From: Octopus sinensis
Taxonomy: Eukaryota
Assembly (NCBI RefSeq): GCF_006345805.1
Contig: NC_043007.1
Span: 43,524,001 to 43,588,000 of the forward strand
DNA length: 64,000 bases
Reading direction: 5' to 3'
Below, one piece after another: positions 6,770 to 63,807 of this stretch. A program made the translations under genes and the position numbers. The notes under the pieces were generated by a model. The model made no database searches and was not told the DNA's origin. It worked only from the letters and a program-made list of their open reading frames with translations. How positions within the stretch are numbered: the first letter of the stretch is position 1; every line of letters starts with the position of its first letter.

Positions 6770-7332
6770 TTTCCTTTTAGAATTCCGGAAAGGCGTTATG
6801 TCACGTCTCTGGCGCCTTAATGATGAAGGAACTCCAGATGCAATTAAATGGAGACCCTTAGAACGACCGGGGATGTATATAAACAGGAGCGGTCGATGCA
6901 AGCTTTGCATAGCAGAAGGAGCAAGGATCCTAAAAGACTCGCTAGACTTAGAGATCCTTTTAAACTCTAGAAATGAGGTCTGCAGCCCTTCTCCGCATTC
7001 TAAACGCAACCTGCTGCAAGCGTGCGATTCCCCTTTCGTGGATTAGCTCTATAATATTTGCGGGATGGAACCAATCTAAGGGCGAGGATTCCCTCATTCG
7101 TTGATTAGGGTTGTAAGCATTTATTGACTAGGATCGATCTATGGGTGATAAACCGTCCCACTTAAGCCTCAGACAATATTTTTTTGTCTACCAAATTAAC
7201 TGACCGTAATGTTTTTGTATCTTTAGTTTGAAAAACGGTTATATGTTCGCGGCTATTGGAGTCTGAAGAATCGTCTATAAGGCTAAGCGCGTTATGGATG
7301 CGAAATCATTGGAAATCTATGATCGGCCATAT
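6770..7332 (+). mobile_element. Penelope-like element 3' fragment (GIY-YIG endonuclease C-terminus plus 3' end)
   Basis: SRLWRLNDEG..IKWRPLE....Y..RSGRCKLCIAE...IL......LLNSRNEVCSP..H, the same W..C.LC..E..LN.R.E motif as at 53420. A CTGAAGA...GAAA...ATC motif follows downstream. Confidence 0.75.
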
Positions 7333-12171: not shown

Positions 12172-12578
12172 TATTCTTTTTATTTGTTTCAATTATCAGA
12201 TTGCGGTCATGCTGGAGCACCGTCTTTAGTCGAAGAAATCGACCCCAGGACTTATTCTTTTGTAAGCCTAGTACTTATTCTATCAGTCTCTTTGCCGAAC
12301 TGCTAAGTTACGGAGACGTAAACACACCAACATCGGTTGTCAAGCGATGGTGGGGGACCAGTTCAGACACCCACACACCCACACCCACACAGACAGACAA
12401 ACACACACTCCTATACGACAGGTTTCTTTCAGTTTCCGTCTACTAAATCCACTCATAAGGCTTTGGTCGGCCCGAGGCTATAGTAGAAGACACTTGTCCA
12501 AGATGCCACGCAGTGGGAGTAAACCAGGAACCATGTGGTTGGGAAGGAAGCTTCTTACCACATAGTCACGCCTGCGCC
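12172..12578 (-). mobile_element. tRNA-derived SINE family 2, full length
   Basis: The minus strand starts ggcgcaggcgtgactatgtggtaag (A-box-like) and has a B-box-like ggtttactcc, a ttggacaagtgtcttc core, an internal CA-rich tract and the family tail. Confidence 0.85.
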
Positions 12579-23498: not shown

Positions 23499-24993
23499 GA
23501 TGAAGTATTTATTTTGCAAAGTATGATGTTGTGAATAAGTTTATCAACATATCCGAAGCGGTTTGAAGATTAAAGCTGAAGCGAACCTTAGTATAGTCAA
23601 TTTCTTACTTATTAAGTCTAGATTTAGGTGCCGATAAATACTATTCTTAAGTAACCTAATGAGAAATTCCAATATATTAACATAAATTCCGACTATCTCC
23701 CAATAAATAAAAGCCTTTAGTAATATCAGTGCGGATATATCGAGTTTATCTTCCAGTAAGAAATTCTTTTACAGTGCTGCTAATTAGTACACTGAGGCAT
23801 TGAAAGACGATAGATTTATAGCTAAAATCCACCACGTACAGAATTTATAGATAAAATCCACCACGTACAGAAAAATACTAATATTTATAAATGCAAAAAA
23901 TGAAAATAAACTGTTAAATGTTACCATCCACCCCATAGTTTAAATGTGTGTTCTATGATTTACCTAAACCTTATAAATAGGCATTTTATCATAGATCACA
24001 AATATTTAATAGAAATAGTATTGAGGTAAGTTACAGCTGCCCTCAAAATGTCGTTAATTCCCTTGCTACATAAACGGAAGAAAATTTTCTTGTACATGCA
24101 CCGAACTCTTCCCTTTTATATAATTGCAACAGCTCTTATATCTGGTACGTCTTTCTAAAAGAGCTAAGGCTTCTCTAACAGATTAAACAAAAGTTATATT
24201 GGGCTCGCTCAGAAAATATTAAAAGATGTTTCTCGCAACATATTGTTACGAACCTGCCGTCGCTCAACTCGAACCCGGGACCCTACTAAGTCGAGCGACG
24301 ATGATGACCAGGCTCAGTCAAACGGAATCCGCCAAAGAAAACGGTGATGGGGATGGCAGCGAACTCAAACCGGTAACCGGAGATAACAACAACAACAACA
24401 ACAACAGGAAGAGAGAGAGAGACGGCGGAAGGCAGTTGCTTACATTTAACAACAGTTTATACAATTGTTACAACATCAAATAAAACGTGAAACATCAGAT
24501 ATATTAAAGAAAATACAGAATTAAAAAGAAAAACAACTAATGCATTTAAACATAACACGACGTTCGAAAACAATCAAAACGCAATACAGAGTTCGAAAAA
24601 TAGTTCAAATTAAAGTCTTTCTCTTTTCTTCTTTCTTTCTTTAACACAATGTTCTTTTCCCTTCTTTTTCTTTCTTTTCCACAGTTCTCTTTTTTTGACA
24701 CAATTCTTTTTCTTTTTTTTACAACAGATTACAGTTTACGTCACAATTCTTTTTTAAAGTTCTTTTCTTTCAACGCACATCAACACCAAAATTCAACAAC
24801 AAAAAAACATAAACAAAACATTACCGAACGTTTTCGAGTCTGCAACAATTTCAGATCCTACTACAACAATCTATGCCTTCTCGCCGTAATCTCTCTCAGT
24901 TCCTTTCCGCTTGACATGTCCTCAATACTATCTGCCTGTCCTTCTCGCCTCTTGCCAACTGTCATCTCTGCATCGACCCTTACGCCAACTACC

Positions 24994-36379: not shown

Positions 36380-39179
36380 ACTATAATATATATCAGATAT
36401 AGTATAAGATAAATGATCCGAGAGTTTCAACAAATGCAGACATTTCAGAAAGTTCCTTTTAGCCTCCTGGAAAAACACACGACCAACAGATGAAACTGAT
36501 TTACTAACCTGAGAAGCACCATGAACATATACATACAGAAATGAGCATACATACACTATATTTAAACTCATTTTGTAATTCACTAATTGGACATATAACA
36601 CTGCTTATCAAAAACCACGGCTTAGGTTTTAGATTTCTAAACTTATTCCCAAAACTGAAGGAAAGTCTCAACAATATAGAAGTATTAATCAAATTAACTC
36701 ATTATGATAATATATTCTTTTGGGGCGTTTTCACTCTTCCCAGCTTCAAATGATTGCAGACATAGAAAATTTCTTATTGATCATCCTAACATTCAAGGAA
36801 TAAATTTTTCTACTCAAACGTAAGCAATAGCTTAGATGATTGATTAAAAAGCTAATTAGAAATATTTATGCAGTGAGGGAAAATAATGTTAAACTATGAA
36901 CAATATTATGTTAATTGTTTTGTTATGCACTGGAGAAAAATCTGGACGTTCCGACATTCTGTTCTTATCAGCAAAGCATTTTCTTTCATTGTATTTGCCG
37001 AAATATTTGAGGAAGAACAATTAAGCAAAGCAGTAAAATATTGATAAAAAATATAAGTTTATAGAATAACTATCCTAGATATGTCATCTGTGTAATAAAA
37101 CACTGGTTAAATAAGGGTGCATTAAAGATGTGTGTATTAAAGATCTAACTAGAAGTAATAATGCAGATATCATACACTAGATATTGTAGAATTCGTTCAT
37201 AATATGAAGAAAATTATGTAATATTACCTGAACATAACGAATGACCTTACAAGACCTGTAGCTTCCCCAACTCATCTGAAGCATTCTAACTCTCTCCGGC
37301 TTGAATTTCTGCTAGGGTGAATGGAAATCTATGAAGAATGAGAATAGAAAGCTGAACTGTCCATTTACGCTCTCTATATACGACATGAAAGTGAATCAGT
37401 TTATATCAAGAATTCAGTTGAATGGATTATGTCTAAGAGAGGAAGGCCAAGGTTCGTAAAGATATCATTTCTAAGGGTTGTAAAATTCTCATAAGTCAAA
37501 GTCATTGTTAGGAAGGAGCCAATTTCAGAATGTTATTCGGATAAATTAAAGATACAATAAAATGCTTCCACAGAAATAAAGCAGCACCAAAATTTTCTGT
37601 AGTTGTGTGAAAGGAACAGTCTTAGTGCATTTATAACTTATCACAGACTCTTGAAAGGTAAGCGAATCTCGAACGATTCAATACGCAACAAATACTATAA
37701 CTTTGTACAGAAATTTATAAAACACATCGTTATAAAAGATGTAATAACTACAAAATCTGCCAGAGATTGAAATTAACCTGAACTAAAGCAAGTAGTTTTA
37801 ACTGTTTCCCGATAATTTTTCTGAAAAACCTGCAAAAAGTTTCTGTTCAAACCTTTTCAAATACTTTTCCAAAGCTTTCTTAGAATTCCCCAAAAGTTGA
37901 AAAGGAGATACTTCTTATCTACAAGCTATGAAGCAAAGCAGATATTAAAAATTGCAGCTCTATCACTGTGATATAGAACGAATTAGCAAAAAGAAATTAG
38001 TTACGTTTTTAGAAACTAATTCGAAAAGTGACAGCAAGGTTTCTATCTAGGTAGGAGCTTCCTCACATAGCAATTGAGGCATTGTGTTTGTACATTAAAT
38101 CAGCTTTCCAAGCGGTCAAACTTAGATATTGGTAGATATAGACTAATTGTAGCTAAAGAGTTTCTCCCATGTACAAATAGCCACGTTGAAGAAACTCCTT
38201 TACAGTATAGGGCTTGGAATCAGGCGTCGAAAGTGAGGTTTTATGTATGACATTTCTGATAGAGCAACGTCCTTCACACTACGTTACTGTATAATCCTAA
38301 ATTACTATACTGGTAGCTTTCGATCATTTCATAGAATACTGTTTATTGCTGCAGCAATCATTCTCCTGTGATGTAAACAAGATGTTGATGACAAGACTAT
38401 GGTAGCTTATATTTCTGAGAGATTACTTTTGTTTGAGGCAAGTTGGTTGAGCATTATCAGAATACGCATTTAATTCTCAGCCTATTTCCAACTTCTGGTA
38501 AGAGCTATCGACTTTTTGTTTCGTAGTGACAATATGTGCTATGATAAGTACGTAAATATGAGCTGTCATTTCAGAGGGACAGAGAAAAGAAGAGAGGGAG
38601 AGTGAGTGAGAGAGAGAGAGAGAGAGAGAGAGTGAGAGATACAGAGAGATACAGAGAGAATGATTGTAGCTGCGATATGCTTGGTTAACTTCGAGAAAGT
38701 ATTCTGCATTTTTCATAGAAACCAAGTTTGTCAGTCACCTTTTCACTGATGGTTTTATTTTAGAAAGCGTTTTCCCAGAATTTATATATCCCATTTAACC
38801 CATCTGCATGCCTCTCGGGGTACATTTCACGATAAATTGTTGAACAATCATTTAATTTAGGGCCACCTTTCATGGCCCTACTGTTTGCTTTTTTTAGATG
38901 ACTAGTGCTGGAACAGTAGAGAATCGAGTTTCTCCAGTAGAGGTTTATAATGTGATTTATCTAGACTTGAAACTACCAGAGCAGGTTAAGAACATAGACT
39001 TCTCTTGTTGGCTCATTTACAATGTGTGTAAAGTATGACAGTCAGTTGTTACTTTTACCTAGATTAGCCCTGGTCCAATAGATTTATGTCAACAGCATTC
39101 CAACTATAAACTTTTCGTCTTTTTAGGATTATATTGTTACGTAGGACTACATTTTTGAAAATGCCCTTTTTCGTTTTTT

Positions 39180-39605
39180 AGACATTAGGTTATGATCTGA
39201 AGGAAATTTGGCTCCTATTCCTAGTAAGTAAACTACATTGTTTAAAATGACCTTCCCTTTATATAGACGTTAGGATGTGATTTGAAAGAAATTTGGCTAT
39301 GTTTAGCAGATCAAGTACATTTCCAAAAACGTCTTTCCCATTATTTTTTAGACGTTAGAATGTGATCTGAAAGAGATTTGGCTCCTATTTATTGCAGGCC
39401 AGACGTAGGGATGTGGTCTGAAGGAAATTTGATTTTTATTTCTAGCAGGTCAACTACATTGTCTAAAATGTCTTTCCCTTTATTTGGACGTTAGAATGTG
39501 ATCTGAAATAGATTTGGCTCTTATTTCTAGCAGGTCAACTACATTGTCTCAGATATCCTTTTCTTTAGACGTTAGGATGTGATCTGAAGTACATTTAGCT
39601 TCTAG
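39180..39605. repeat. Degenerate tandem repeat, about 80-85-bp unit, about 6 copies
   Basis: Recurrent gacgttaggatgtgatctgaaggaaatttggctc..tttctagcaggtcaactacattgtc. Dispersed relatives near 9210, 25470, 26080 and 26230. Confidence 0.8.
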
Positions 39606-40235
39606 TAAGATGAAGCGTGCTACTGTCAGCAATGTCTGCCGTTGGAATGCTAAGCTTTTCTTGATGATGGATATTCTTGGAAGCGCCGCTAATAAGCATA
39701 ATATAAATTCCACATCTCAAAGCATTGGAATCTGTATATCATTCTATTAATAATTGTGGTGATGGGGAGACAGTAAACTACGTCAGTTAGATTCTTAGCC
39801 ATAAGATGGTCAGTGATCTATATGATTCATATGTTCCTTAATATCTGTTCTAGGATCACGGCGTACAGTAATATCTTCTCTGTAATTAACAGCAGTGTCA
39901 ACACCTGAAGCTTCACTTCGATCTCTACAGTTATATATGGAATATTCAAAAATCATGTTGCAGTTAATTCCATTGATTACTGAATCCCCCAAATTCTCCA
40001 TAGCTATCACTATGGTGTATATTACTGCAAAGCCTCGGGGCTAAGGGTGGCAGATTTGCCTATATTAGACATTATCACAGCTCAAGTGCAATGCATACAT
40101 ATATACATACATAAATACACACATACATACATATATACATACATACATACATACACACACATATTTACAAGTTAATTATATGGATATATATATATAAACA
40201 TATATATCTATACATATATACATACATAAATACAC

Positions 40236-40286
<51 letters not shown>

Positions 40287-40330
40287 ATATACATACATGC
40301 ATACATGCATACATACATGCATACATACAT

Positions 40331-40408
<78 letters not shown>

Positions 40409-40557
40409 CGTATTTTTGCCATCTCAATATGGCTAACCCCTAAGGGTGGATGCTACTGTAGTTTTTAGCCCCAGGAGGACACACTCCTCCAGCTGGCCAT
40501 AGACACACTTTCTGTGTCCTGTCAGTATTTGAAAAGGGAAGTCATCCTTCCCGTCTT

Positions 40558-40627
40558 CAACTTATGATACACACGGACTCGAGTTTCGAGGTATTGACCT
40601 CTCGTCAGCGTGTGACAATCATAGTTG
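40558..40627 (-). ncRNA. Type I hammerhead ribozyme, intact (GUC cleavage between 40576 and 40575)
   Basis: Exact reverse complement of the intact plus-strand copy at 41647-41716. Confidence 0.92.
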
Positions 40628-40910
40628 TCGCCGAGAATTAGATTTCCTTCACAAATACTTATACTTTTTCCAGCGCCCACTGTCGCTGATATTGAAAAAG
40701 TGAAATCAAACAATGATAAATATCAAAGTGAGTTATATACAGTAGCGGTAACACATCGTGACGTATTTTTGCCATTTCAATATGGCTAACCCCTAAGGGT
40801 GGATGCTACTGTAGTTTTTAGCCTCAGGAGGACACACTCCTCCAGCTGGCCATAGACACACTTTCTGTGTCCTGTCAGTATTTGCAAAGGGAAGTCATCC
40901 TTCCCGTCTT

Positions 40911-40980
40911 CAACTTATGATACACACGGACTCGAGTTTCGAGGTATTGACCTCTCGTCAGCGTGTGACAATCATAGTTG
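40911..40980 (-). ncRNA. Type I hammerhead ribozyme, intact (cleavage between 40929 and 40928)
   Basis: Same sequence; 353 nt from the 40576 site; lies inside the spacer of the palindrome. Confidence 0.92.
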
Positions 40981-41293
40981 TCGCCGAGAATTAGATTTCC
41001 TTCACAAATACTTGACGGGAAGGATGACTTCCCTTTGCAAATACTGACAGGACACAGAAAGTGTGTCTATGGCCAGCTGGAGGAGTGTGTCCTCCTGGGG
41101 CTAAAAACTACAGTAGCATCCACCCTTAGGGGTTAGTCATATTGAAATGGCAAAAATACGTCACGATGTGTTACCGCTACTGTATATAACTCACTTTGAT
41201 ATTTATCATTGTTTGATTTCACTTTTTCAATATCAGCGACAGTGGGCGCTGAAAAAGTATAAGTATTTGTGAAGGAAATCTAATTCTCGGCGA

Positions 41294-41363
41294 CAACTAT
41301 GATTGTCACACGCTGACGAGAGGTCAATACCTCGAAACTCGAGCCCGTGTGTATCATAAGTTG
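41294..41363 (+). ncRNA. Type I hammerhead ribozyme with U16.1 to C change (GUC to GCC), predicted impaired
   Basis: ctcgagCccgtgtg at 41344 vs ctcgagTccgtgtg in the other three copies. Confidence 0.85.
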
Positions 41364-41646
41364 AAGACGGGAAGGATGACTTCCCTTTGCAAATACTGAC
41401 AGGAAACAGAAAGTGTGTCTATGGCCAGCTGGAGGAGTGTGTCCTCCTGGGGCTAAAAACTACAGTAGCATCCACCCTTAGGGGTTAGCCATATTGAAAT
41501 GGCAAAAATACGTCACGATGTGTTACCGCTACTGTATATAACTCACTTTGATATTTATCATTGTTTGATTTCACTTTTTCAATATCAGCGAAAGTGGGCG
41601 CTGGAAAAAGTATAAGTATTTGTGAAGGAAATCTAATTCTCGGCGA

Positions 41647-41716
41647 CAACTATGATTGTCACACGCTGACGAGAGGTCAATACCTCGAAACTCGAGTCCG
41701 TGTGTATCATAAGTTG
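41647..41716 (+). ncRNA. Type I hammerhead ribozyme, intact (cleavage after C41698)
   Basis: CAACUAUGAUUGU CACACG CUGACGA GAGGU CAAU ACCUC GAAA CUCGAG UC CGUGUG U AUCAUAAGUUG. Confidence 0.95.
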
Positions 41717-41912
41717 AAGACGGGAAGGATGACTTCCCTTTGCAAATACTGACAGGACACAGAAAGTGTGTCTATGGCCAGCTGGAGGAGTGTGTCCTCC
41801 TGGGGCTAAAAACTACAGTAGCATCCACCCTTAGGGGTTAGCCATATTGAAATGGCAAAAATACGTCACGATGCGTTACCGCTACTGTATATAACTCACT
41901 TTGATATTTATC

Positions 41913-42008
<96 letters not shown>

Positions 42009-43211
42009 GTATACACATACACTTAATGACTTAATGTATGTATGTTGTTAAAACACCACTTGCTGTAGTTTTTCGTTTGGGAAAGGTTCCTTTAGAAACG
42101 CATAGTGTTAAAAAATACAATACTATGTTTTTTTTTTTAACATTATACGTCTTACAAAGGATCTTTGTCATACGAAAAACCGCAGATCCTGGTGTTTTAA
42201 CAGCACACATACATTAAATTCTGTGATATTGATAACGTTTGCATTATTGAGCTGCTTCAAACACATAATTTGAATATTTCTATATAGTTTATTTCTGTAT
42301 TTATTTCTACGATTTTTAGATCCTTCTATTTTATTTTCAGGACAAAACATACTCAAATAGATGAACAACAACGCCGCACACTTGATGTATGCATGCTCTG
42401 GGAAGAAAACCCCACAGAATATTGCAAAATAGATTTTCTAAAAAAAATATAAGACACCATCGGAGAAAGAAGAGTTCGTGTTCTTAGTCACTGCTGGGGA
42501 GAAAAAAAGGAGCTGGTTAGAGACATCCACTACTTTGCATACTTCCAAATGGGAATAGCGTTGGTCGCTCTGCGAAGACAAACGACGGCCAGTTAAGAGA
42601 TAACAATGGATATCATCGAGAAGAACTATCATGTCATGGGAGATAGAGATGCAGGGAATATGAGAGTCACAAGAATCCGGGTTCAACCCGGTGATAATGG
42701 TGATGATAACCATGATGATGATGATGATAATGATGATAATGATGATAATCACGACGACGACGATAATATGTGGTCATTGTAAATAAGAACGTTATCGAAG
42801 TATGCGTATAAATATTTGTTGATAGGCAGTTTTTTTAAAATATTATTAAGGGTTCTTTTTCTCTCTAATAACCTTTTCCCCCTTTTCTCAGTGGTTATAC
42901 CTTTGTGGAAATGTATTTGATATAAATGTTTTTCATGTCATTGTTTTCCACTTTATATACTTTACGCACAATTTTATAGACTCTTATTTTCCATTTTCCC
43001 CATAAACAAAATGAAAAAAAATTATCCCGTACATATGATACAACCTTTAGTTAAAATGTATATATCTGCCACGTTAATAAGCTTAAATATTTCACGGAAT
43101 AACACTTATGCGCATGCATTAAGTGATAGGTGATATAAAAAACTTAGTTCAATTAAAAACGAATACACCACCACTGCCATCATCTCCCCTCTCTCTCCTG
43201 TTTCTCTCTCC

Positions 43212-43254
<43 letters not shown>

Positions 43255-43960
43255 GTTCCTTTAACCTCACCGTCAGAACATCACCCCTCTACTAAAATTA
43301 TATTTTTAACTCTCCTCCGCTACTTTCAACTAACATTTTTAATCACGTAATAAATATTACGTTCTCCCTACCTCACGTCATGGAAGCTTCCTTCTCGTTT
43401 TTCTTTCTCCATCTTCCTGCGTCACTCTTCGCCTTATCCTCTTTTTCTCTCTCCTCTCTTTCCCTTCAACTAATCACGCGAAAGCGATACAATTACATTC
43501 CCTCTACCCCACACCATGGACGCTTCTCTTTCCCTATTTTCTGTCTCCCTACTTTTCTCTAATCACATGAAAGCGCTACCGACGGGCTAAGCAACGCAAT
43601 GACAAGCAGAATTATTATAAGATGACTCAGTTAGATGCCAGGATCTTTTAAGGGCCTCCGTGAATGGTAGATGGGAAGGACGAAGTTATCCCCAGAGCAG
43701 ATGGCAGGTCCACGTACATGCAACAGAATGGTGTTAAACTGAGTGACGAATTACATCTGCCACCTAACAACAAAAGCGATTTCTCTAGTGGGCTTCCGTA
43801 CAGTTTCCGTCTATCATGTATCACGATGTTTTGATAAACTCGATGTAAGTGGGGAAGAAGACACTTGTTGAAGAAGTCAGGCTACAGGAATGGATATGAA
43901 AAATTATAGTTTCCAATCGAGCTTCTTAACTACACAGCCATGCTTTCGAGTTCTCACACA

Positions 43961-44095
43961 GCTTGCTTACTAACCACATACTTCCGGGTTCAGTCCCACT
44001 GCGTGGCATCTTGGGCAAGTGCCTTCTACTATAGCCTTAGGCCGACCCAAGCCTTGTGAGTGGATTTGGTTGACGGAAACTGAAAGAAGCCCATC

Positions 44096-44161
<66 letters not shown>

Positions 44162-44410
44162 GTATGTATATATATGTATGTGTGTGTATATGTTTGTATG
44201 TCTGTGTTTGCCCCCCCCCCCGACATCGCTTGACAACCGATGCTGGTGTGTTTACGTCCCCGTAACTTAGCGGTTCGGCAAGAGGAACCGATAGAATAAG
44301 TACTATGCTTACAAAGAACAAGTTTTGGAGTCGATTTGCTCGACTGAATGCGGTGCTCCAGCATGGCCGCAGACAAAATGAATGAAACAAATAAAAGAAT
44401 AAAAGAAAAG
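43961..44410 (+). mobile_element. tRNA-derived SINE family 2
   Basis: ccgggttcagtcccactgcgtggcatcttgggcaagtg head and core, TA/TG tract and family tail. Preceded by a diverged opposite-strand head at about 43780-43945. Confidence 0.85.
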
Positions 44411-48529: not shown

Positions 48530-48919
48530 TTGTTCTTTCTTTTCTTTTACTTGTTTCAGTCATTTGACTGCGGCCATGCTGGGACACCGCCTTTAGTCGA
48601 GCAAATCGACCCCAGGACTTATTCTTTGTAAGCCTAGTACTTATTCTATCGGTCTCTTTTGCCGAACCGCTAAGTTACGGGGACATAAACACACCAGCAC
48701 CGGTTGTCAAGCGATGTTGGGGGGAACAAACACAGACACACAAACATATGCATACATATACATACATATATACGACGGGCTTCTTTTAGTTTCCGTCTAC
48801 CAAATCCACTCACAAGGCTTTGGTCGGTCCGAGGCTATAGCAGAAGACACTTGCCCAAGGTGCCACGCAGAACCCGGAAGCATGTGGTTGGTAAGCAAGC
48901 TACTTACCACACAGCCACA

Positions 48920-48921
<2 letters not shown>
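48530..48921 (-). mobile_element. tRNA-derived SINE family 2, full length
   Basis: High identity to 49668-50070. Confidence 0.9.
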
Positions 48922-48979
<58 letters not shown>

Positions 48980-49670: not shown

Positions 49671-50070
49671 CTCTCTTTTACTCTTTACTCTTTACTCTTT
49701 TACTTGTTTCAGTCATTTGACTGCGGCCATGCTGGAGCACCGCCTTTAGTCGAGCAAATCGACCCCGGGACTTATTCTTTGTAAGCCCAGTACTTATTCT
49801 ATCGGTCTCTTTTGCCGAACGGCTAAGTGACGGGGACGTAAACACACCAGCATCGGTTGTCAAGCAATGCTAGGGAGACAAATACAGACACACAAACATA
49901 CACGCACATACATATATACGACAGGCTTCTTTCCGTCTACCAAATCCACTCACAAAGCATTGGTCGGCCTGAGGCTATAGCAGAAGACACTTGCCCAAGG
50001 TGCCACGCAGTGGGACCGCACCCGGAACCATGTGGTTGGTAAGCAAGCTATTTACCACACAGCCACTCCT
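49668..50070 (-). mobile_element. tRNA-derived SINE family 2, full length, abutting an (AAT)n tract
   Basis: The minus strand starts aggagtggctgtgtggtaa and continues through the core and tail. Confidence 0.9.
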
Positions 50071-51533: not shown

Positions 51534-52081
51534 GTGTCTGTCTGTCTGTTTCTCTTTTTTCAGAATTGATCTCGGTCAGAATTTGTGATCGTGAACGTCA
51601 GTTGTCCGACCAACAGATAAACCAGGCTCATTGTAATAACGATGACGTGTAAGTGGTTGAATATTTCACAGCAACATGTATACTTAACGTACTTCTCAAG
51701 TGATTGTGAAGCAAACTTCTTCATCTTAATCATTTGACCAAAGCAGAGAGAAAGAGGGAGAGGGAGATAGAGAAAGAGAGTGAGAGGGAGGGAGAAGGAG
51801 AGTGAGAGAAAAGGATAGAGAAGGATAAAGAGACAGAGAAACTTCCTAATATTTTATGTAAGTCGATACATTTTTCATTTGAGCAATTGTCACTTCGATC
51901 ACTTGAATTACCATTAAATGTCTGTACACTGCACAACACACACACATGCACACACGCGCACACACAAACACACACGCACACACACACACACAAGCACACA
52001 CACACACTGACACGCGAGACACACATACACAAATGTGTATTGTGTGTGTGTGTGTGCGATAGTGTATGTGTATGTGTGTAT

Positions 52082-52177
<96 letters not shown>

Positions 52178-52654
52178 CCGATTGAATAATGAGACCATAT
52201 GTGTCTTTCTCTTCAGGAAGAAATGGGAAATCCGTTGGAAAAAACAAGTGCCTTTCGAAACACGTGTAGAATGAAATAAAACGATTTCTGTTCAATCTTC
52301 GTTCAGCTCCATTTCTTCAATTCACTAATAATATTAAAATTCAATTATCCGCACCAACGCACGGTTGCAACACCATATGGTTGTACCTCCAACCGTGCTG
52401 TCTTCTGCTGTGATTTTTGCTACCAAGGTATCGGTTAAACTTTTGATTAATCTGCTACAAGATTATTCATCTTTCTATTTCACATTATATATATATATAT
52501 ATATGAATGTGTGTGTATATGTATAAGTGTGTGCGTGTATGTATTTGTATGCATATATGCATGTACATGTTTATATATATATATGTGTGTGTGTGTGTAT
52601 GTGTTTGTGTGTGTGTATGTATGTATGTTTGTGTATACACAGATTTGTAGACAC

Positions 52655-52930
52655 AGGCGTGGCCGTGTGATAAGAACTTTACTTTCTAACCACATGGTTA
52701 AGGTTTCAGTCCCACAGCATGACACTTTGGGTTAAGGTTTTCTACTATAAACTCGGGTCAACCAAAACTTTGTAGGTGGGTTTGGTAGATGGAGACTAAA
52801 AGAAGCCCGCAGTATATATATATGTGCGCGTATGAGTGTATGTGTGTGTGAGTGTGTGTGCGCGTATTTATGTCTGTGTTTGTCCTCCACCACCGCTTGA
52901 CACCTGGTGTTGGTTTGGTGGATGTAGGAA
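52655..52930 (+). mobile_element. tRNA-derived SINE family 2, 3' truncated
   Basis: ggcgtggccgtgtgataag...ggtttcagtcccacagcatgacactttggg head and core, followed by part of the tail. Confidence 0.8.
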
Positions 52931-53419
52931 TATATATATGTACATGTATATGTCCAGATCTCTGCGTGTATGCATCCACACTTATACGAGTGTGCATGTG
53001 TGCTTAGATGTACATTCACACATTCGTGGGCGCGAACATGCACACACAGTCACACATACACGCACACGCATACACATATACGCATACTTACGTACACACA
53101 CGAACTCACACACACACACACGTGCACACCTTTATCTCCATGTACAAAAGCATACGAGCACACGCGCACACACATAAATGTGCTCGTGTACATACATGCA
53201 CACGAATGGGTTCACACGTACATGGTGCGCTCGCACGCATAAACATCTATGCGCATGCATACGGTGAGCAGATGTATATGCGTACTCACGCACATGCACG
53301 CGCGCACCTATACTCGCGTGGTCATTTACAAGAGGTGATGTACAAGGAGTAAGAGTATGTTGATAGACAAGCATGGAGAAGTGTTGGGGATTGGTGATTT
53401 GCGGTACTGTTCATGGGGA

Positions 53420-55345
53420 TTAATTTGTGATGGTGACCTTGGTGCAGGCGGTGTTAGGATAAGGCTGATACTGAAGAGGTATATCCGGGTTGTCGTCGGC
53501 CAGTGGCTTGAAATTTATCAGAAGGGTGTACCTCTGGTGACAGCAATACGATATTTCATATTTCTTGTTGATGGATACTGTGGTTTGGTCGCTGATATGC
53601 AGTTTTTCGCAGAGGCACAGCTGGCAGTCAGGGGCACCAGGTGAATATGGTGACACCCTGCCGATAATAGGCCACTTGATAATGGGTGTTTCGTCTCGAA
53701 AGTCACAAAATTTCCAGAGAAAGCGCGACAGAAGTGTGGAGTTCTCTATGTCCCCAGATGTAAATGACTGTAAGTGCTGGGAGTATCTTCCCTTGAAGTC
53801 CTTGGCTGTCATGCCCGTATAGTGACTAGCAATGCCATCGGATGGTGTAAGGGTGACTCTGTATACTACAGCCCTTGAAAGGCAGGGTCCTCCTGGGCGC
53901 AGGTGGTAGGGTTGCAAGATGGGTTTGTGCGTTGTGTAAGTGAGTTTTTTTACATCTGTTGATGTGTGCGATGTTGGATGTGATGTTGTCTAAGCAGGAA
54001 TTACTTACTTTGACATTATGGGTATTGAATAGTTTATAATAATCATGGCCTCTGGGGAAATGTTTCTTAATTAACGACAGCAAGCCCCTGGCTACGTTGG
54101 TAGAAATTTCAATGTTAAATGGGGAATATACCAGATTATTTTCTTTTTCCTAATTCTTTTGGGGTGAGAAGAGGAGGTTTGGGGTTCGTCTTCATACCTT
54201 AGCTTCTCAGAAAATCCGCTTCTAACCAAAGCATCGTTGTAGTGGTTGGGGGGGGGGGGCGGCTCTGTTAAAGATCTCCATGCTGGCTGAGAGTTTAGAC
54301 ACCCATTTGCTAATTGCCTGAAACCAGGTTTCTAGTTACAGCGTGAGTGGATGTGGGTGGGTACTTGAGCTCTTATGGATATATAGCATTTCTTCTTTAG
54401 GCTTCCCGTAGGGGCAGTATTTTCCCGTGTTCAGGCCTAAGCCTACGCCCAAGAAATCGTCAGGCTGGTAGTAATAGCTATGGACAGGAGGAACTCTGAA
54501 TATTCTTATCAAGTACTTCCTGAACCTGTCCATGGCGTGGCCATTCATATGGCTTGAGATAGCCAGGCCAACGTCCATATAGAGGGGCCGACCTATGTGG
54601 ATGGGTACGTCTCTTGAGGGTATTCAAAATGTATATCCCGACGAGGTCGGCGATTTCAGACCCGTCAAAGATTCCCATAGGGACATCAAACAAAGAATCG
54701 CTTTCATTCTTCACCCAGAAGGAAACATCATGGGTCAGAATTGACTTCCTGGCATTCATGACGATTCTGATATCAAGATCACTAATGCTGGTATATTGTC
54801 CAACAAAAACTAGGGTCTTCAGGAGGAGGAGTTTAGATACGAAAAAGGAGTTGTCAACAATGTCGAACTGCGTGAATTTGTAAGCTGATTTATTCTTGAT
54901 ACCACGGAACCAGTCAATCACAGCTGCGCTGGAAACCATTGAGTCAACTCTGTAGCCCTTCTGATGTCAGAGTTGATAGTATCGAGAATATGCTTGCTAA
55001 TGATACCTATCACGCTTTTGGAGGAGTTGATCATCCTGCATTTGGGGTTGGAATGGAAGTTAGGCTTTTGGTCCTATGGTGGAGTCGCGTGGCAAGGCGA
55101 TCCACGCGATCCTCTATCTTAAGGCAGATAGCTAGCGCCTCTGTTTCTGTCTTTGTATGTGGAATTATGTTTTTTTCAATGTTTTGGTGGTGGCGCTTGT
55201 GAGGAGTCTTGAGTGTGTGGAAATGTTTACTTCATAAATATTTTTTGGTTTTGTCTGCGAGAATGTGCAGATTGGGAGATTGTTTAATACTGGTCATATA
55301 GTCATTTAAGGATTTAAGGAAGGGGTTAGAACAATGCTGAACCTA
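53420..55345 (-). pseudogene. Penelope-like retroelement ORF (RT plus C-terminal GIY-YIG), 5' truncated and frameshifted
   Basis: ADKT, NPKCRMINSSKS.IG.ISK, QW..S.AVIDWF, QFDI, VPMGIFDGSEIADLVGIYIL, LYMDVGL (from YRDDGL), LIKKHFP, AVVYRV..HYTG.T..FKGRYSQH..SF, W..C.LCLCEK..I.....IN...E....CH. The 5' end abuts (TA)n. Confidence 0.92.
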
Positions 55346-55372
55346 TATGGATATATATATATATAATATATA

Positions 55373-55420
<48 letters not shown>

Positions 55421-56462
55421 ATGTATATGTATTTTTCTATGTATATGTACTATATACAAATATGTTTCTGATATATATATCATATACAGATATGTATGTA
55501 CTTCTTTATATGATATATATATGCATAGATATTTATATATCTATATTTGTATATTTATATATCTCTCCTTCTTTCTCTTCCCCCTCACATCACCTCGCAT
55601 ATATCTCCTCACAATCAAATAACATACATATCTTCTCACAATCTGACGTTTTGTAACTTTTAATTTAAATTCCGTTTTTCGTAAGACGAATCTTCTTCAT
55701 TTAACCCGTATTTGTGAAGTTCCTCCATTTTTACTTCCATTATTTATATATTTCCAGCTGCAGCATCCAATGTTTAGAACACTTGTTGCTTTCGGTTGTT
55801 CATATCTCAATTATTTCGTTGGTGTATTTGTTCTATTCACAAAAGAAATTCGGTATTTTTTGACCCGATTCGCATCTGTACAAATGACAATATATTTCAC
55901 GTATATTTATCATATCTTATTATTTTCCATCACCATAGATATTCTTTATATGAAGTGTTTGTACTGCAATTTTGCCTTTCTTCATACTGCAATTACCTCA
56001 TGATTTCGATTGTTATTTGCGGTATAATTTTCACTTACATCGTCCACAAAGGAAAAAAAGAAAGAGAAAAAAAGACAATACAAGATCTTTATCTCAGAAA
56101 TATTGTGTGTCGCACATAATGGCTTTCTTATTTTCTGTACAATTTTCAATTATACACACGTATATATTTAACGCAAAAGAAAAGGAAAAACCACATATAT
56201 TATAAAACTGTCAGTGTAATAAATGAACGTGATTGAAAAGTACAATCTCTCCTTTAAAAAAACGCGTCTTAAATTACGCGTGTCAGCATCCTATATATGG
56301 CTGCTTGAATCTTAGTTATGAATAGCATACATACATACACGCATACATAAGAATAGCTAATATGCTGCCACACACACATACACACGCACACATATAAATA
56401 TACATGTGTGTATGTATGTATATATTCACATATTTATATGCATATTGCAAATGTATATTGTG

Positions 56463-59004: not shown

Positions 59005-59797
<793 letters not shown>

Positions 59798-61857: not shown

Positions 61858-63807
61858 CAGGTATACCTCACCCTAGGTCGTTAATTGGTTCCAGGAGATA
61901 CGATTTACGTCGAAAAACGACTTAAGTCGAATCAACTTGTCTCTAGGCTAGGCTAGGCCGAATTTACTTGTTTCTGTCCTAAACCGATAATAACTATTCC
62001 CAGTCCGGTACTTTATTTATGAATGCATCTTCAATAATACATGGTTAATAAAAACCTATTTTAAGTTTACAAACAAATAATTTTCATTTTTTAATACAGT
62101 ACAGTAAAAAAATGTAATCTAAATTTACGAATACAATTTGGCGGTGCTTACCGTACATCGTGGACGCTTTATTTATGAATGCGGTTTGCAATAGGACATG
62201 GTAAAACAAAAGCCTTTTTAAAGCTTACGAAACAAATTCAGTAAATATTATTATTTTGCAATTGTAAAAAAACAATAAAATTATTTAAAATTTACCAATA
62301 CGTACATACAATTTGGTGGTTTACATCGCGGATGTAGATGGCTGTGGATCGTTAGTATCAACAGCTAAATCTGGCTGTTCTTGTTGTTCGATGCACTTAA
62401 AAAATTGAACTGTCTTCTTTTCCTCAAGGATTACATAATAAGGAGCAAAAGCTTCGTGACAAACCCCCATAACGAGAAAGCAGCCGATAAACAGACGTAA
62501 GCAAATCTGAATTCAAAACAATCGCGGGTATCACGAATGACACCGACGCCTAACGGTAGATATTGAAACTACAGTTGCAGGGGAACTGACACATCCGGTT
62601 TGCAGTTGAAAAAGATTATGAAACGAAACTAGATGAATCGAAAATCATGATGGAAAATTTAAGGAAAGTCTTATAATGATAAGAGAAGTACTAAAAAAAC
62701 TGGATCAAAGTGTTAATATACTTCTGATGGGTGACTCAAACTTCACCAACATCAAATGGCGCGAAGACTACATAATCTCGCAAAGAGCGTAATCAAGCAG
62801 AATCTCTACTTGACCTCACAAAAATGCTGTTCATGGAGCAAACAATACTCTTCCCAACCAGGAATGATAACATATTAGACCTCTGTTTCACCAACAATGT
62901 AGGTCTTATCCATAACATGAAGGTAACGCTGACAATCTTTTCAGGCCACAGCATGGTAGAACGACGATGTATAGTCCAAAACCAATTAATGATGTATTCC
63001 ACACAGACGACACCCAAACTCTGTCTAGTCTAAACTTCTACAAGACTGAGTGGAAGTCAAATGAAAAATGGAATACATCATTAATTGGTTTTGGACTATA
63101 CATCGTCGTTCTACCATGCTGTGGCCTGAAAAGATTGTCAGCGTTACCTTCATGTTATGGATAAGACCTACATTGTTGGTGAAACAGAGGTCTAATATAT
63201 TATCATTCCTGGTTGGGAAGAGTATTGTTTGCTCCATGAACAGCATTTTTGTGAGGTCAAGTAGAGATTCTGCTTGATTACGCTCTTTGCGAGATTATGT
63301 AGTCTTCGCGCCATTTGATGTTGGTGAAGTTTGAGTCACCCATCAGAAGTATATTAACACTTTGATCCAGTTTTTTTAGTACTTCTCTTATCATTATAAG
63401 ACTTTCCTTAAATTTTCCATCATGATTTTCGATTCATCTAGTTTCGTTTCATAATCTTTTTCAACTGCAAACCGGATGTGTCAGTTCCCCTGCAACAATA
63501 GAAAGACCAATAAATAAGACAACGCAGTGATTTCATGATTTCGTTCACTAAGCTACACTCCTTTATGGTGTGTATCTTAACATTTACTGTATGTATTTTA
63601 ATATGATTTTATATGCTTTTATTCTTATTTATTTTATGTGCTTTTAACGGTTTTCTAGTGATTTTACCATTCCAATATTTGTGGCGGACAGGCGAAAGTC
63701 GAGTAAAAGGACAAACTTGATTTTTATTTTTCCATATATTATTTTTGAAAGCCGACGTATAATCGAGTACGACTTAAATCGAAACGACTTAAACCGAGGT
63801 ATGCCTG
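61858..63807. mobile_element. Tigger/pogo-like non-autonomous DNA transposon
   Basis: Termini CAGGTATACCTC and GAGGTATGCCTG (Tigger-type CAGGCATACCTC). TA on the left flank only. Subterminal (a)cgacttaa motifs near both ends; roughly 155-bp tandem dimer at 62010-62320. Confidence 0.65.
62574..63496. repeat. 923-bp fold-back: 428-bp inverted arms with a 67-bp spacer, made of a CR1/L2-type APE endonuclease fragment
   Basis: 62574-63001 vs 63069-63496; I see 1 mismatch. Encodes ILLMGDSNF..IKW, FMEQTILFPTRNDNILDLCFTNN, FSGHSMVE and LNFYKTEW. Confidence 0.92.

What the first reader, a model, noticed from the sequence alone, without database searches (positions are those of the whole stretch)
40405..41915. 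Young retrozyme-like array: 353-nt units delimited by hammerhead ribozymes, predicted to yield a circular RNA
Seen: about 4.3 copies of a 353-bp non-coding unit, about 99% identical, inserted between (TA)n tracts. There are four HHRs, and cleavage positions are exactly 353 nt apart on each strand (40929 to 40576 minus; 41345 to 41698 plus). Established: metazoan retrozymes are short tandem non-autonomous retroelements with type I HHRs whose transcripts self-cleave to monomers that circularise, and PLEs are their proposed mobilisers. Inference: a recently active cephalopod retrozyme family. The class is known; I cannot tell without a search whether this family has been described.
Basis: partly seen in the sequence, partly recalled or inferred. 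Interest (0 to 1): 0.92.

Follow-up and report, generated by a model that had tools for sequence, protein, structure and literature searches.

The report
Octopus hammerhead retrozyme, inverted twin insertion
A 1.5-kb block of 353-bp non-coding repeats carrying self-cleaving hammerhead ribozymes sits in a (TA)n microsatellite of an octopus-like genome; it is an ordinary, though undescribed, member of the known animal "retrozyme" class, and its layout fits insertion by a Penelope-like retrotransposon.

Summary
The repeat is real: 1511 bp of a 353-bp non-coding unit, about 0.6% from its consensus, between two (TA)n tracts. It is not one head-to-tail array. It is two arrays joined head-to-head: 40405-41013 (minus sense, 1.73 units) and 41014-41915 (plus sense, 2.55 units).

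Three type I hammerhead ribozymes are intact (Rfam RF00163, 32.2 bits, gathering cut-off 34). The fourth, cleaving after 41345, has U16.1>C and scores 22.8 bits, so it is probably crippled. Only the minus arm has two intact sites, which would release a 353-nt monomer (40928-40576).

Every sequence-level criterion of metazoan non-LTR retrozymes is met. Transcription and circular RNA could not be tested.

The layout fits published Penelope-like element (PLE) integration:
- Both arms are 5'-truncated, with 3' ends outward.
- The 3' ends lie 46 nt apart inside the unit (171 and 217), with no homology to the target.
- The target is an AT microsatellite.

The window also holds four decayed copies of an RT + GIY-YIG family matching the 'Hydra' PLE clade. 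Intact relatives carry hammerheads with the same short helix III.

Nearest protein matches are Octopus. No other copy of the unit was found in the window or in the collections I could search.

Verdict: new member of a known kind, moderate interest.

The parts
40094..40404 (.). Left target flank: (CATA)n/(TA)n microsatellite, ending in a pure (TA) run at 40374-40403
   Evidence: TRF; sequence; TA-run scan
40405..41013 (-). Minus-sense arm, 609 nt (1.73 units). The sense strand runs from 41013 (unit position 269, 5'-truncated end) to 40405 (unit position 171, 3' end against (TA)n). Private changes are 105G>A, 44G>T and 153A>G.
   Evidence: Alignment to the unit; inverted repeats I1-I5
40923..40967 (-). 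Intact type I hammerhead; cleavage 3' of C17 at 40929
   Evidence: Rfam RF00163, 32.2 bits, E 1.1e-5
40570..40614 (-). Intact type I hammerhead; cleavage 3' of C17 at 40576
   Evidence: Rfam RF00163, 32.2 bits, E 1.1e-5
40576..40928 (-). The only 353-nt monomer bounded by two intact hammerheads; the predicted precursor of a linear and then circular RNA
   Evidence: Positions. Fold of the equivalent plus-arm unit 41346-41698: -116 kcal/mol, z -5.7. Circular consensus fold: -117.1 kcal/mol, 63% paired.
41013..41014 (.). Head-to-head junction of the two 5'-truncated arms (unit 269 on the left, unit 21 on the right). It has no microhomology and no filler, and it is not a symmetric palindrome.
   Evidence: Sequence; alignment; the nearest complement of the right arm's start lies 105 nt left of the junction (I4)
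41014..41915 (+). Plus-sense arm, 902 nt (2.55 units). It runs from unit position 21 to unit position 216/217 against (TA)n. Private changes are 144C>T, a 1-nt deletion at 258, 352T>C, 60C>A, 247C>A and 176T>C.
   Evidence: TRF; alignment
41307..41351 (+). Hammerhead with U16.1>C (T>C at 41344), which breaks the conserved A15.1-U16.1 pair; probably crippled
   Evidence: Rfam 22.8 bits against 32.2 for the other copies; sequence
41660..41704 (+). Intact type I hammerhead; cleavage 3' of C17 at 41698
   Evidence: Rfam RF00163, 32.2 bits
41916..42013 (.). Right target flank: (TA)n microsatellite
   Evidence: TRF; TA-run scan
53495..55339 (-). Context, not part of the array: a decayed, frameshifted copy of a Hydra-clade-like PLE (RT + C-terminal GIY-YIG), matching residues 87-713 of P0151. 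Its 5' end lies 12 nt from a (TA)n run. Shorter remnants lie at 59052-59531(-), 23542-24067(+) and 6684-7022(+).
   Evidence: tblastn; BLASTP 49% identity, E 7e-34; family motifs; RT fold; TA runs

Best explanation
This is a single, fairly young insertion of a non-autonomous, non-coding hammerhead retroelement (a metazoan non-LTR retrozyme) into a (TA)n microsatellite of an octopod genome. It was most likely made in trans by a Penelope-like element (PLE) reverse transcriptase/GIY-YIG endonuclease.

Inferred insertion mechanism:
1. The enzyme cut both strands of the AT-rich target.
2. Each 3'-OH primed reverse transcription at an internal site of the retrozyme RNA, at unit positions 171 and 216/217, 46 nt apart, without homology to the target.
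3. The template carried intact GUC|C junctions, so it was either a ligated 353-nt circle copied round and round or an uncleaved multimer.
4. It was copied for 1.7 and 2.6 unit lengths.
5. The two 5'-truncated cDNAs were joined head-to-head.

Inferred life cycle, by analogy with retrozymes tested in a coral, a mussel and the axolotl: transcripts of the sense strand self-cleave after GUC, and the 353-nt monomer, with a 5'-OH and a 2',3'-cyclic phosphate, is circularised by the host RtcB-type tRNA ligase into a highly paired circular RNA. At this locus only the minus arm has two intact ribozymes.

Shown here: the repeat anatomy, the ribozyme motifs, the predicted folds, the target, the absence of detectable coding capacity, and PLE remnants nearby. 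Inferred: transcription, cleavage, circularisation, and which enzyme did the insertion.
For: Ribozyme:
- All core nucleotides are present (CUGACGA, GAAA, A15.1-U16.1, C17).
- Helix I is 6 bp and extends through an internal loop into UAUGAU/AUCAUA and CAAC/GUUG.
- Helix II is GAGG/CCUC with loop UCAAUA; the Rfam consensus loop is CAAAUA.
- Helix III is A-U and C-G plus a UCGA loop.
- Rfam RF00163 scores 32.2 bits, E 1.1e-5, three times.

Retrozyme features:
- The unit is 353 nt with GC 42.8%.
- The monomer folds with z -5.7, and the circular form is 63% paired.
- No frame exceeds 66 codons, and a six-frame protein search found nothing.

One event:
- All 9 differences are private. None is shared between units or specific to one arm.

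PLE-type integration:
- Both arms have their sense 3' ends against (TA)n and their 5'-truncated ends meet in the middle. This is the 'partial tandem plus inverted 5'-truncated copy' typical of PLEs (PMC8557442).
- A purified PLE protein cuts and extends both DNA strands, prefers AT-rich DNA, and starts reverse transcription at two adjacent internal RNA sites not homologous to the target. The stretch between those sites is the optional 30-40-bp 'tail' (PMC11167929).
- Here the two 3' ends are 46 nt apart. The RNA downstream of them (GAUGUG, GUUUGA) has no homology to (TA)n.
- Pure (TA)n runs cover only 1.8% of the window.

Candidate partner clade:
- Four decayed copies of an RT + C-terminal GIY-YIG family lie in the window.
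- The family shows every hallmark listed for the Hydra PLE clade: an RW[KRQ] motif for the published RWK, DKT, a CxC-X5-6-C linker for the published CxCX5C, no CCHH, and CxxC..E..N..CxH.
- Its model has an RT fold.
- Five of six contigs with intact ORFs carry a type I hammerhead with the same helix III design, GAAAC-N4-5-GUH, and fully covarying helix I. The sixth has only 11 nt of 3' UTR.
- In L003 the tandem unit has about 495 nt of non-coding sequence around the ribozyme.
- Hydra-clade elements are reported to insert almost always into (TA)n and to occur in molluscs.
- A decayed relative in another dataset (L007) shows two 5'-truncated copies head-to-head between microsatellites.
- O. vulgaris is reported to have 336 PLE insertions at 2% divergence or less.
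Against: - Only one locus is available. No other copy of the unit was found in the window or in any collection I could search, so 'family' and 'mobile' are inferences.
- There is no evidence of transcription, cleavage or circles.
- The hammerheads score just below Rfam's gathering threshold.
- Thermodynamic folding prefers an alternative pairing of the core (-24.2 against -17.4 kcal/mol for the hammerhead fold), and helix III alone is unfavourable, so cleavage may be slow or need a dimeric form or a protein.
- The PLE remnants in the window are old. They carry no detectable hammerhead and share no sequence with the unit.
- 46 nt is somewhat longer than the published 30-40-bp tail.
- Target-site duplications cannot be read in (TA)n.
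- Naiad and Neptune PLEs also target (TA)n, so the clade assignment is weak.
- Gene conversion between the inverted arms could make the locus look younger and more uniform than it is.
Confidence: 0.7

Rival explanations
1. Two independent insertions of the same element in opposite orientations, the second landing exactly at the 5' end of the first. This would still be retrozyme/PLE biology, but not one dual-strand event.
For: PLE ribonucleoproteins are reported to nick AT-rich DNA either in their own terminal repeat or elsewhere, so nested or adjacent reinsertion is plausible. The junction has no microhomology.
Against: No (TA) residue is left between the two 5' ends. The arms show similar divergence (3 changes in 609 nt against 6 in 902 nt) and no arm-specific variants. 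Inverted 5'-truncated partners are described as a regular product of PLE insertion.
Confidence: 0.12
2. Leftover terminal repeats (pLTRs) of an autonomous PLE that lost its ORF at this site, followed by local DNA-level amplification by unequal crossing-over. On this view it is not an independently mobile non-autonomous family.
For: A 2026 preprint proposes that retrozymes arise from PLE terminal sequences and then amplify locally. The tandem Hydra-like element in L003 has about 495 nt of non-coding sequence around its hammerhead, close to the unit size here.
Against: No trace of RT or endonuclease coding sequence lies inside or next to the array. Unequal crossing-over does not produce an inverted arm. 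The star-like pattern of private changes fits one burst.
Confidence: 0.08
3. Assembly artefact: a false inverted duplication, for example from a chimeric or missed-adapter long read, or mis-collapsed repeats.
For: PLE-type tandem/inverted structures are noted to cause assembly problems. A second young inverted repeat lies at 62569-63501 in the same window.
Against: The structure is asymmetric: unit 269 is joined to unit 21, and the outer ends are at 171 and 217. The arms differ by private substitutions and one indel. The two flanks are different sequences. A missed-adapter palindrome would be a perfect mirror image.
Confidence: 0.05
4. Integrated cDNA of an exogenous viroid-like or delta-like circular RNA replicon rather than a genomic retroelement.
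For: The unit is small, highly self-paired and carries a hammerhead. Its junction-spanning multimers imply a circular or multimeric template.
Against: Only one polarity carries a ribozyme. The hammerhead is the metazoan type I form. There is no ORF. GC is low like the host genome. The insertion signature is that of a host retroelement.
Confidence: 0.03

Closest known systems
Metazoan non-LTR retrozymes (Cervera & de la Pena 2020, PMC7229834), e.g. the Mytilus galloprovincialis repeats of about 350-390 bp and the axolotl 330/350-bp repeats
   Same: - Type I hammerhead once per unit.
- Tandem units of a few hundred bp.
- Low GC.
- No LTR and no ORF.
- Monomer predicted to be highly self-paired.
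- PLEs present in the same genome.
- Helix III of 2 bp plus a tetraloop, described there as the invertebrate type.
   Different: - The host is a cephalopod, which the papers I could search do not report.
- The unit has no detected sequence relative.
- The locus is a head-to-head pair of short arrays rather than a simple tandem.
- RNA circles have not been shown here.
Hydra clade of Penelope-like elements (Craig et al. 2021, PMC8557442)
   Same: - Canonical rather than minimal type I hammerhead in the non-coding part.
- (TA)n target preference.
- Tandem/inverted insertion structures.
- The clade is reported in molluscs, and decayed family members occur in this window.
- The hammerheads of intact family members (L001-L005) share the GAAAC-N4-5-GUH helix III design.
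   Different: - The 353-nt unit encodes nothing and shares no detectable sequence with the PLE copies found.
- No intact, closely related PLE was available to compare terminal sequences.
- Naiad or Neptune PLEs could equally provide (TA)n-targeted integration.
PLE integration in vitro (Poseidon of Anolis carolinensis; Frangieh et al. 2024, PMC11167929)
   Same: - Cleavage and extension of both DNA strands.
- AT-rich target.
- Internal, non-homologous start of reverse transcription at two nearby sites, which explains the 'tail'.
- Unprocessed, uncleaved RNA is used as template.
   Different: - A different PLE clade and a coding element.
- The published tail is 30-40 bp, against 46 nt here.
- Nothing was tested biochemically here.
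Newt/salamander satellite 2 hammerhead repeats
   Same: - Unit of about 330-350 bp with a type I hammerhead.
- Weak helix III with a palindromic loop that can form an extended intermolecular helix III. Here ACUCGAGU gives 8 bp at -12.1 kcal/mol.
   Different: - Those are very large satellite arrays in vertebrates with a 1-bp helix III that needs dimers.
- Here the block is a 4-unit dispersed insertion with a 2-bp helix III.
Twin-priming inversions of LINE-1
   Same: Two cDNAs primed from the two strands of one target site give an inverted, internally truncated insertion.
   Different: - In L1 twin priming the arms are two parts of one linear RNA, and one end carries poly(A).
- Here both arms run through more than one unit of a repeating or circular template and both start at internal sites.

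Membership tests
Hammerhead ribozyme, type I (Rfam RF00163) | Conserved core (C3-A9, G12-A14, A15.1-U16.1, H17) with helices I, II and III, helix I open | tested here: met
   Three copies have the full core and all three helices (32.2 bits, E 1.1e-5; sequence). The fourth copy fails at U16.1 (22.8 bits).
Hammerhead ribozyme, type I (Rfam RF00163) | Score at or above Rfam's gathering threshold (34 bits) | tested here: not met
   The score is 32.2 bits, 1.8 below the cut-off. The shortfall comes from the helix II sequence, not from the core.
Hammerhead ribozyme, type I (Rfam RF00163) | Self-cleavage 3' of H17 | not testable with these tools
   Needs in vitro transcription. The thermodynamic MFE prefers a competing fold.
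Metazoan non-LTR retrozyme | Canonical type I hammerhead in each unit of a short tandem repeat (150-450 bp, dimers to multimers) | tested here: met
   353-bp unit. Each arm contains two hammerhead sites 353 nt apart. One of the four sites is mutated.
Metazoan non-LTR retrozyme | Low GC (below 45-50%); no LTR, PBS or PPT; non-coding | tested here: met
   GC is 42.8%. No LTRs appear in the repeat scans; PBS and PPT were not searched for specifically. The longest frame is 66 codons, and no homologues were found.
Metazoan non-LTR retrozyme | Monomer RNA highly self-paired | tested here: met
   MFE -116 kcal/mol, z -5.7 against shuffles. The circular fold is -117.1 kcal/mol with 63% paired. These are predictions only.
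Metazoan non-LTR retrozyme | [quoted passage not shown] | not testable with these tools
   No RNA data are accessible. Exact-ORF look-ups in public assemblies were empty.
Metazoan non-LTR retrozyme | Co-existence with autonomous PLEs in the genome | tested here: met
   Four decayed PLE-like copies lie in the window. The literature reports PLEs, including recent ones, in Octopus. No intact PLE was seen in the window.
Metazoan non-LTR retrozyme | Multiple dispersed copies (a family) | tested here: inconclusive
   No second locus occurs in 64 kb. The source genome is not searchable with these tools.
Plant LTR retrozyme | Type III hammerheads inside LTRs, PBS and PPT, about 700 bp between ribozymes, GC above 55% | tested here: not met
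   The ribozyme is type I, there are no LTRs, the spacing is 353 nt and GC is 42.8%.
Autonomous Penelope-like element (for the array itself) | ORF encoding RT, with or without a GIY-YIG endonuclease | tested here: not met
   tblastn with four family proteins gives no RT or endonuclease similarity in 40405-41915. No long ORF is present.
PLE-type insertion architecture | Partial tandem plus an adjacent inverted 5'-truncated copy; optional tail from two RT start sites; AT-rich or microsatellite target | tested here: met
   Head-to-head 5'-truncated arms, 3' ends at unit positions 171 and 217 (46 nt apart), and (TA)n on both sides. Compared.
Hydra-clade PLE (for the remnants at 53495-55339 and elsewhere and their intact relatives) | Short single ORF with RT + C-terminal GIY-YIG; RWK and DKT motifs; CxCX5C linker; no CCHH; CxxC and CxH around the conserved E and N; canonical hammerhead | tested here: met
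   Alignment A1 shows RW[KRQ] in place of the published RWK, DKT, a CxC-X5-6-C linker, no CCHH, and CxxC..E..N..CxH (against the list). The model has an RT fold. Five of six contigs carry a type I hammerhead in the UTR. No reference Hydra sequence was available for a phylogeny, so the assignment rests on motifs.
Viroid-like or delta-like circular RNA replicon | Ribozymes in both polarities and/or a delta-antigen-type ORF | tested here: not met
   Rfam at E up to 10 on both strands finds hammerheads in one polarity only and no other ribozyme. There is no ORF.

The most novel reading that the evidence does not exclude
The locus may be a molecular fossil of how animal retrozymes move.
- A Hydra-clade-type PLE enzyme cut both strands of a (TA)n target.
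- It started reverse transcription at two fixed internal sites of the retrozyme RNA, unit positions 171 and 217, which would be the 'tail' signature.
- It copied a circular 353-nt RNA, or an uncleaved multimer, round and round to give two multimeric cDNAs joined head-to-head.

If the same paired 3' ends and inverted partners recur genome-wide, that would tie non-LTR retrozymes to PLE integration, possibly to a specific clade, through insertion-site anatomy rather than co-occurrence or sequence similarity alone.
Probability: 0.35. Interest if true: 0.6.

Novelty: new member of a known kind. Interest (0 to 1): 0.42.

Why it matters
Non-LTR retrozymes were defined in 2020, and their mobiliser is still inferred mainly from co-occurrence with PLEs and from similarity to PLE terminal repeats. 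None of the papers I could search reports hammerhead retrozymes in cephalopods.

This locus extends the class to an octopod. More usefully, it is a clean, young insertion whose boundaries can be read:
- two 5'-truncated multimeric arms, head-to-head;
- internal 3' ends 46 nt apart;
- no homology to the (TA)n target.

These are the features seen biochemically for a PLE protein, so a genome-wide survey of the family could test the PLE-mobilisation hypothesis from sequence alone.

Two practical points follow. Rfam's gathering threshold misses these ribozymes. Pfam misses the whole Hydra-like RT + GIY-YIG family (at least 2515 cluster representatives), so both are likely under-annotated in mollusc genomes.

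Tried and rejected
Searches for further copies of the unit, all empty:
- Exact look-ups of three unit ORFs in public assemblies.
- A protein search with all six-frame translations of the unit concatenated.
- Pattern scans of viral contigs and of metagenome contigs, twice.
- blastn of the unit against the rest of the window, where the best outside hit has E 0.22.

Other negative results:
- The Rfam gathering scan of the whole window found nothing. The hammerheads appear only with the E-value threshold.
- No other ribozyme family and no antisense ribozyme was found.
- Pfam on the GIY-YIG-like ORFs and on full-length family proteins found nothing useful.
- The word-indexed protein search for the endonuclease-like ORF was empty. 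The exhaustive HMMER search was needed.
- A PDB sequence search with P0151 was empty.
- No hammerhead lies near the window's decayed PLE copy.
- Rfam missed the hammerheads of L001-L005, and so did my first, too strict descriptor. A relaxed motif scan found them.
- No (TA)n occurs in contigs L001 and L002, so my own data do not confirm the target preference of the intact relatives.

Explanations rejected:
- Snap-back synthesis or a missed-adapter palindrome, because the junction is asymmetric.
- Simple inversion of part of a direct array, because rejoining would give 171|21, which is not a continuous unit.
- A TATA-like box (TATATAA, unit positions about 191-197) was noted but not pursued, since it is uninformative in AT-rich sequence.
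Full report
**1. What is there**

The region 40405-41915 consists of a 353-bp unit. It lies between a (CATA/TA)n tract (40094-40404) and a (TA)n tract (41915-42013).

TRF reports only 41014-41915 as a tandem array (period 353, 2.6 copies, 98% matches, no indels). The repeat finder shows why. The left part, 40402-41013, is the reverse complement of 41261-41872 (612-nt arms, 99%).

I aligned both parts to one unit, with position 1 as the first base after the hammerhead cleavage site and position 353 as C17.
- Plus-sense arm: starts at unit position 21 (41014), runs through two cleavage junctions and ends at position 216/217 (41915).
- Minus-sense arm: its sense strand starts at position 269 (41013), runs through two junctions and ends at position 171 (40405).

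So there are 2.55 and 1.73 units, joined head-to-head. Both 5' ends are truncated and meet at 41013|41014, and both 3' ends lie against the microsatellite. The junction has no microhomology and no filler. It is not a mirror point, because the nearest complement of the right arm's start lies 105 nt to the left.

There are nine differences from the consensus: eight substitutions and one 1-nt deletion at unit position 258 of the first plus unit. All are private to single units. None is shared between units or specific to an arm. That is 0.6% divergence with a star-like pattern, which fits a single origin.

No other copy of the unit exists in the 64-kb window.

**2. The ribozymes**

Rfam at its gathering threshold finds nothing in the window. 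With an E-value threshold, Hammerhead_1 (RF00163) matches end-to-end:

| Position | Strand | Bits | E-value | State |
|---|---|---|---|---|
| 40570-40614 | - | 32.2 | 1.1e-5 | intact |
| 40923-40967 | - | 32.2 | 1.1e-5 | intact |
| 41660-41704 | + | 32.2 | 1.1e-5 | intact |
| 41307-41351 | + | 22.8 | 0.015 | U16.1>C |

The gathering score is 34 bits.

The intact sequence is CACACG-CUGACGA-GAGG-UCAAUA-CCUC-GAAA-CUCGAGUC|CGUGUG.
- All core nucleotides are present.
- Helix I is open, which makes it type I. It continues past a small internal loop into UAUGAU/AUCAUA and CAAC/GUUG.
- Helix II has 4 bp. Its 6-nt loop is close to the Rfam consensus CAAAUA.
- Helix III is only A-U and C-G closed by UCGA.

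That is the 'two base pairs plus tetraloop' form that Cervera & de la Pena describe as the invertebrate type. The palindrome ACUCGAGU could also form an 8-bp intermolecular helix III between two ribozymes (-12.1 kcal/mol), as in the dimeric newt ribozyme.

The weaker copy reads GAGCCC, a T>C change at 41344. This breaks the A15.1-U16.1 pair next to the cleavage site. From my own knowledge of hammerhead mutagenesis this pair is essential, so cleavage after 41345 is probably poor.

The one monomer expected to be released efficiently is 40928 to 40576 on the minus strand. No ribozyme is detected in the opposite polarity.

**3. Is it a retrozyme?**

The criteria of Cervera & de la Pena 2020 are:
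- a canonical type I hammerhead;
- tandem units of 150-450 bp, from dimers upward;
- low GC;
- no LTR, PBS or PPT;
- small, highly self-paired circular RNAs;
- PLEs in the same genome.

Results here:
- The unit is 353 bp with 42.8% GC.
- The longest stop-free frame in a circular reading is 66 codons.
- A protein search with all six frames finds nothing.
- The monomer folds to -116 kcal/mol (z -5.7 against dinucleotide shuffles).
- As a circle it folds to -117.1 kcal/mol with 63% of bases paired. Helix I of the ribozyme extends into a long stem pairing positions 2-52 with 272-321.

All sequence-level criteria are met. Expression and circularity cannot be tested with these tools.

**4. Organism**

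A hAT-like ORF at 370-963 has its best matches in Octopus vulgaris and O. bimaculoides proteins (64-77% identity, E down to 1.5e-62). The window is AT-rich and full of microsatellites. An octopod origin is therefore supported, but the species is not determined.

None of the papers I could search reports hammerhead retrozymes in cephalopods.

**5. How it got there**

The structure matches what is published for Penelope-like elements.
- Craig et al. 2021 describe PLE insertions as 5'-truncated partial tandems, often with an inverted 5'-truncated copy at the 5' end. They also describe an optional 30-40-bp tail and a bias for microsatellites, (TA)n in particular.
- Frangieh et al. 2024 showed that a purified PLE protein cleaves and extends both strands of an AT-rich target.
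- They also showed that reverse transcription starts at two adjacent internal sites of the RNA that are not homologous to the target, and that the stretch between these sites is the tail.
- They found that uncleaved RNA is the main template.

The same features appear at this locus.
- Both flanks are (TA)n, although pure (TA)n of six or more repeats covers only 1.8% of the window.
- Both arms have their 3' ends outward.
- The two 3' ends are 46 nt apart in unit coordinates (171 and 217).
- The RNA immediately downstream of each end (GAUGUG, GUUUGA) has no similarity to (TA)n.
- In the predicted fold, position 171 lies in the CACG loop of a hairpin (162-179) and 217 lies at the base of the next hairpin (200-219). 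I note this without leaning on it.

Both arms cross the GUC|C junction twice. The template was therefore not a cleaved linear monomer. It was either a ligated circle copied more than once around or an uncleaved multimer, and the data do not distinguish these.

The simplest reading is one dual-strand target-primed event whose two cDNAs were joined by the host. Two successive insertions cannot be excluded.

**6. A candidate partner clade in the same window**

Degenerate ORFs at about 53.4-55.3 kb on the minus strand looked GIY-YIG-like. Pfam and the word-indexed search found nothing.

The exhaustive HMMER search found 2515 cluster representatives, 494 of them at E up to 1e-10. They include proteins of about 690-713 residues in which this domain is C-terminal. 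An upstream window ORF aligns to residues 229-336 of one of them, P0151 (49% identity, E 7e-34).

tblastn maps four decayed copies in the window:
- 53495-55339(-), covering residues 87-713;
- 59052-59531(-);
- 23542-24067(+);
- 6684-7022(+).

An alignment of seven family members shows these motifs:
- RW[KRQ], in place of the published RWK;
- an invariant DKT;
- GLYRDDGL;
- a CNC-X5-6-CPLxGxC linker, in place of the published CxCX5C;
- a GIY-YIG core without the CCHH cysteines;
- CxLC..EK...LNxRSE...CxH.

This is the list Craig et al. give for their 'Hydra' clade of C-terminal-endonuclease PLEs. They describe that clade as short (under 3 kb), carrying canonical hammerheads, inserting almost always into (TA)n, and occurring in molluscs.

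An AlphaFold model of P0151 is of moderate quality (mean pLDDT 67, with the palm and endonuclease blocks at 80-89). The listed top Foldseek matches in the PDB are nearly all reverse transcriptases, among them DRT9 (3.6e-7), retron RTs, telomerase (about 1e-5) and group II intron RTs.

Contigs carrying intact ORFs (L001-L006) hold a sense-strand type I hammerhead in the untranslated part, except L006, which has only 11 nt of 3' UTR.
- Their helix I sequences are entirely different but complementary: CUGUGAA/UUCACAG, GUAGUUC/GAACUGC, and an interrupted helix in L001.
- Helix III has the same design as in the window, GAAAC-N4-5-GUH. L001 reads GAAACUCAGAGUU against the window's GAAACUCGAGUC.
- In L003 the motif occurs at both contig ends (61 and 2629). 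This implies a tandem unit of 2568 nt with about 495 nt of non-coding sequence around the ribozyme. An ORF-less derivative of such an element would look like this retrozyme.

Decayed relatives in another dataset (L007-L009) are 68% identical in DNA to 53436-54655. L007 shows two 5'-truncated copies head-to-head between microsatellites, the same architecture as the array.

The largest window copy ends 12 nt from a (TA)n run.

Limits of this line of evidence:
- The window's PLE copies are old. They have no hammerhead and share no sequence with the unit.
- Naiad and Neptune PLEs also target (TA)n.
- The clade assignment of the mobiliser is therefore a lead, not a result.

**7. Age**

On the calibration quoted for Octopus repeats (Jukes-Cantor distance 0.09 equals about 25 My), 0.5-0.6% corresponds to roughly 1-2 My. 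This is an inference. It assumes the same rate and no gene conversion between the inverted arms.

The same paper counts 336 PLE insertions at 2% divergence or less in O. vulgaris. PLE enzymes were therefore plausibly available recently.

**8. Rivals**

- An assembly artefact is unlikely. The structure is asymmetric, the arms carry different private changes, and the flanks differ.
- Local satellite expansion does not explain the inverted arm.
- A simple inversion of part of a direct array would leave a 171|21 join, which is not a continuous unit.
- An exogenous viroid-like RNA is unlikely, because only one polarity has a ribozyme.
- A solo PLE terminal repeat that lost its ORF cannot be excluded without the genome.

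**9. Verdict**

It is a new member of a known kind. The added value is the legible insertion anatomy and the Hydra-clade lead. Together these make the PLE-mobilisation hypothesis testable by a genome-wide survey.

Noticed in passing
window 53495-55339(-), 59052-59531(-), 23542-24067(+), 6684-7022(+): Four decayed copies of an RT + C-terminal GIY-YIG family. By motifs it matches the Hydra clade of Penelope-like elements. The family is large (2515 cluster representatives at E up to 1e-3) yet gets no Pfam hit. The model of a full-length member has a reverse-transcriptase fold.
   Followed up: yes
L001 476, L002 2380, L003 61 and 2629, L004 2533, L005 2466: Contigs with intact ORFs of that family carry sense-strand type I hammerheads with covarying helix I and a 2-bp helix III. 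Rfam's Hammerhead_1 model misses all of them at E up to 0.1. In L003 the element is tandem, with a 2568-nt unit.
   Followed up: partly
L007 645-2171 (also L008, L009): Decayed relatives of the window's PLE copy (68% DNA identity). In L007 two 5'-truncated copies are joined head-to-head at 986-988 and flanked by microsatellites, the same layout as the retrozyme array.
   Followed up: partly
window 62569-63001 and 63069-63501: A second young inverted repeat (433-nt arms, 99% complementary, 67-nt spacer). Its ORF fragments resemble a LINE endonuclease region, though Pfam finds nothing. It may be another inverted retroelement insertion or an artefact.
   Followed up: no
window 12176-12573, 43960-44377(-), 48543-48930, 49696-50070: A dispersed repeat family of about 200-400 bp (74-93% identity between copies), SINE-like in size and distribution.
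   Followed up: no
window 337-2639(+): Remnant of a hAT transposon (Dimer_Tnp_hAT, E 3.4e-10). Its N-terminal ORF has its best hits in Octopus vulgaris and O. bimaculoides proteins (64-77% identity). This is the only evidence for the organism.
   Followed up: partly
window 39146-39596: An 85-bp tandem repeat (two blocks of 2.9 and 2.2 copies, 74-80% matches) about 800 bp upstream of the array. It is unrelated to the 353-bp unit.
   Followed up: no
window 40300-40410, 41760-42000, 51900-53300, 55350-56450: (TA)n and (CATA)n microsatellites produce many spurious sub-threshold Rfam matches (mir-297, mir-3149, mir-466, a pestivirus 3' UTR element). These are composition artefacts.
   Followed up: yes
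window 41013|41014, with arms 40402-41013 and 41261-41872: Read-through transcription across the junction in either direction would give an RNA with about 600-nt complementary arms, a long double-stranded RNA hairpin. That could feed small-RNA or ADAR pathways. This is speculative.
   Followed up: no
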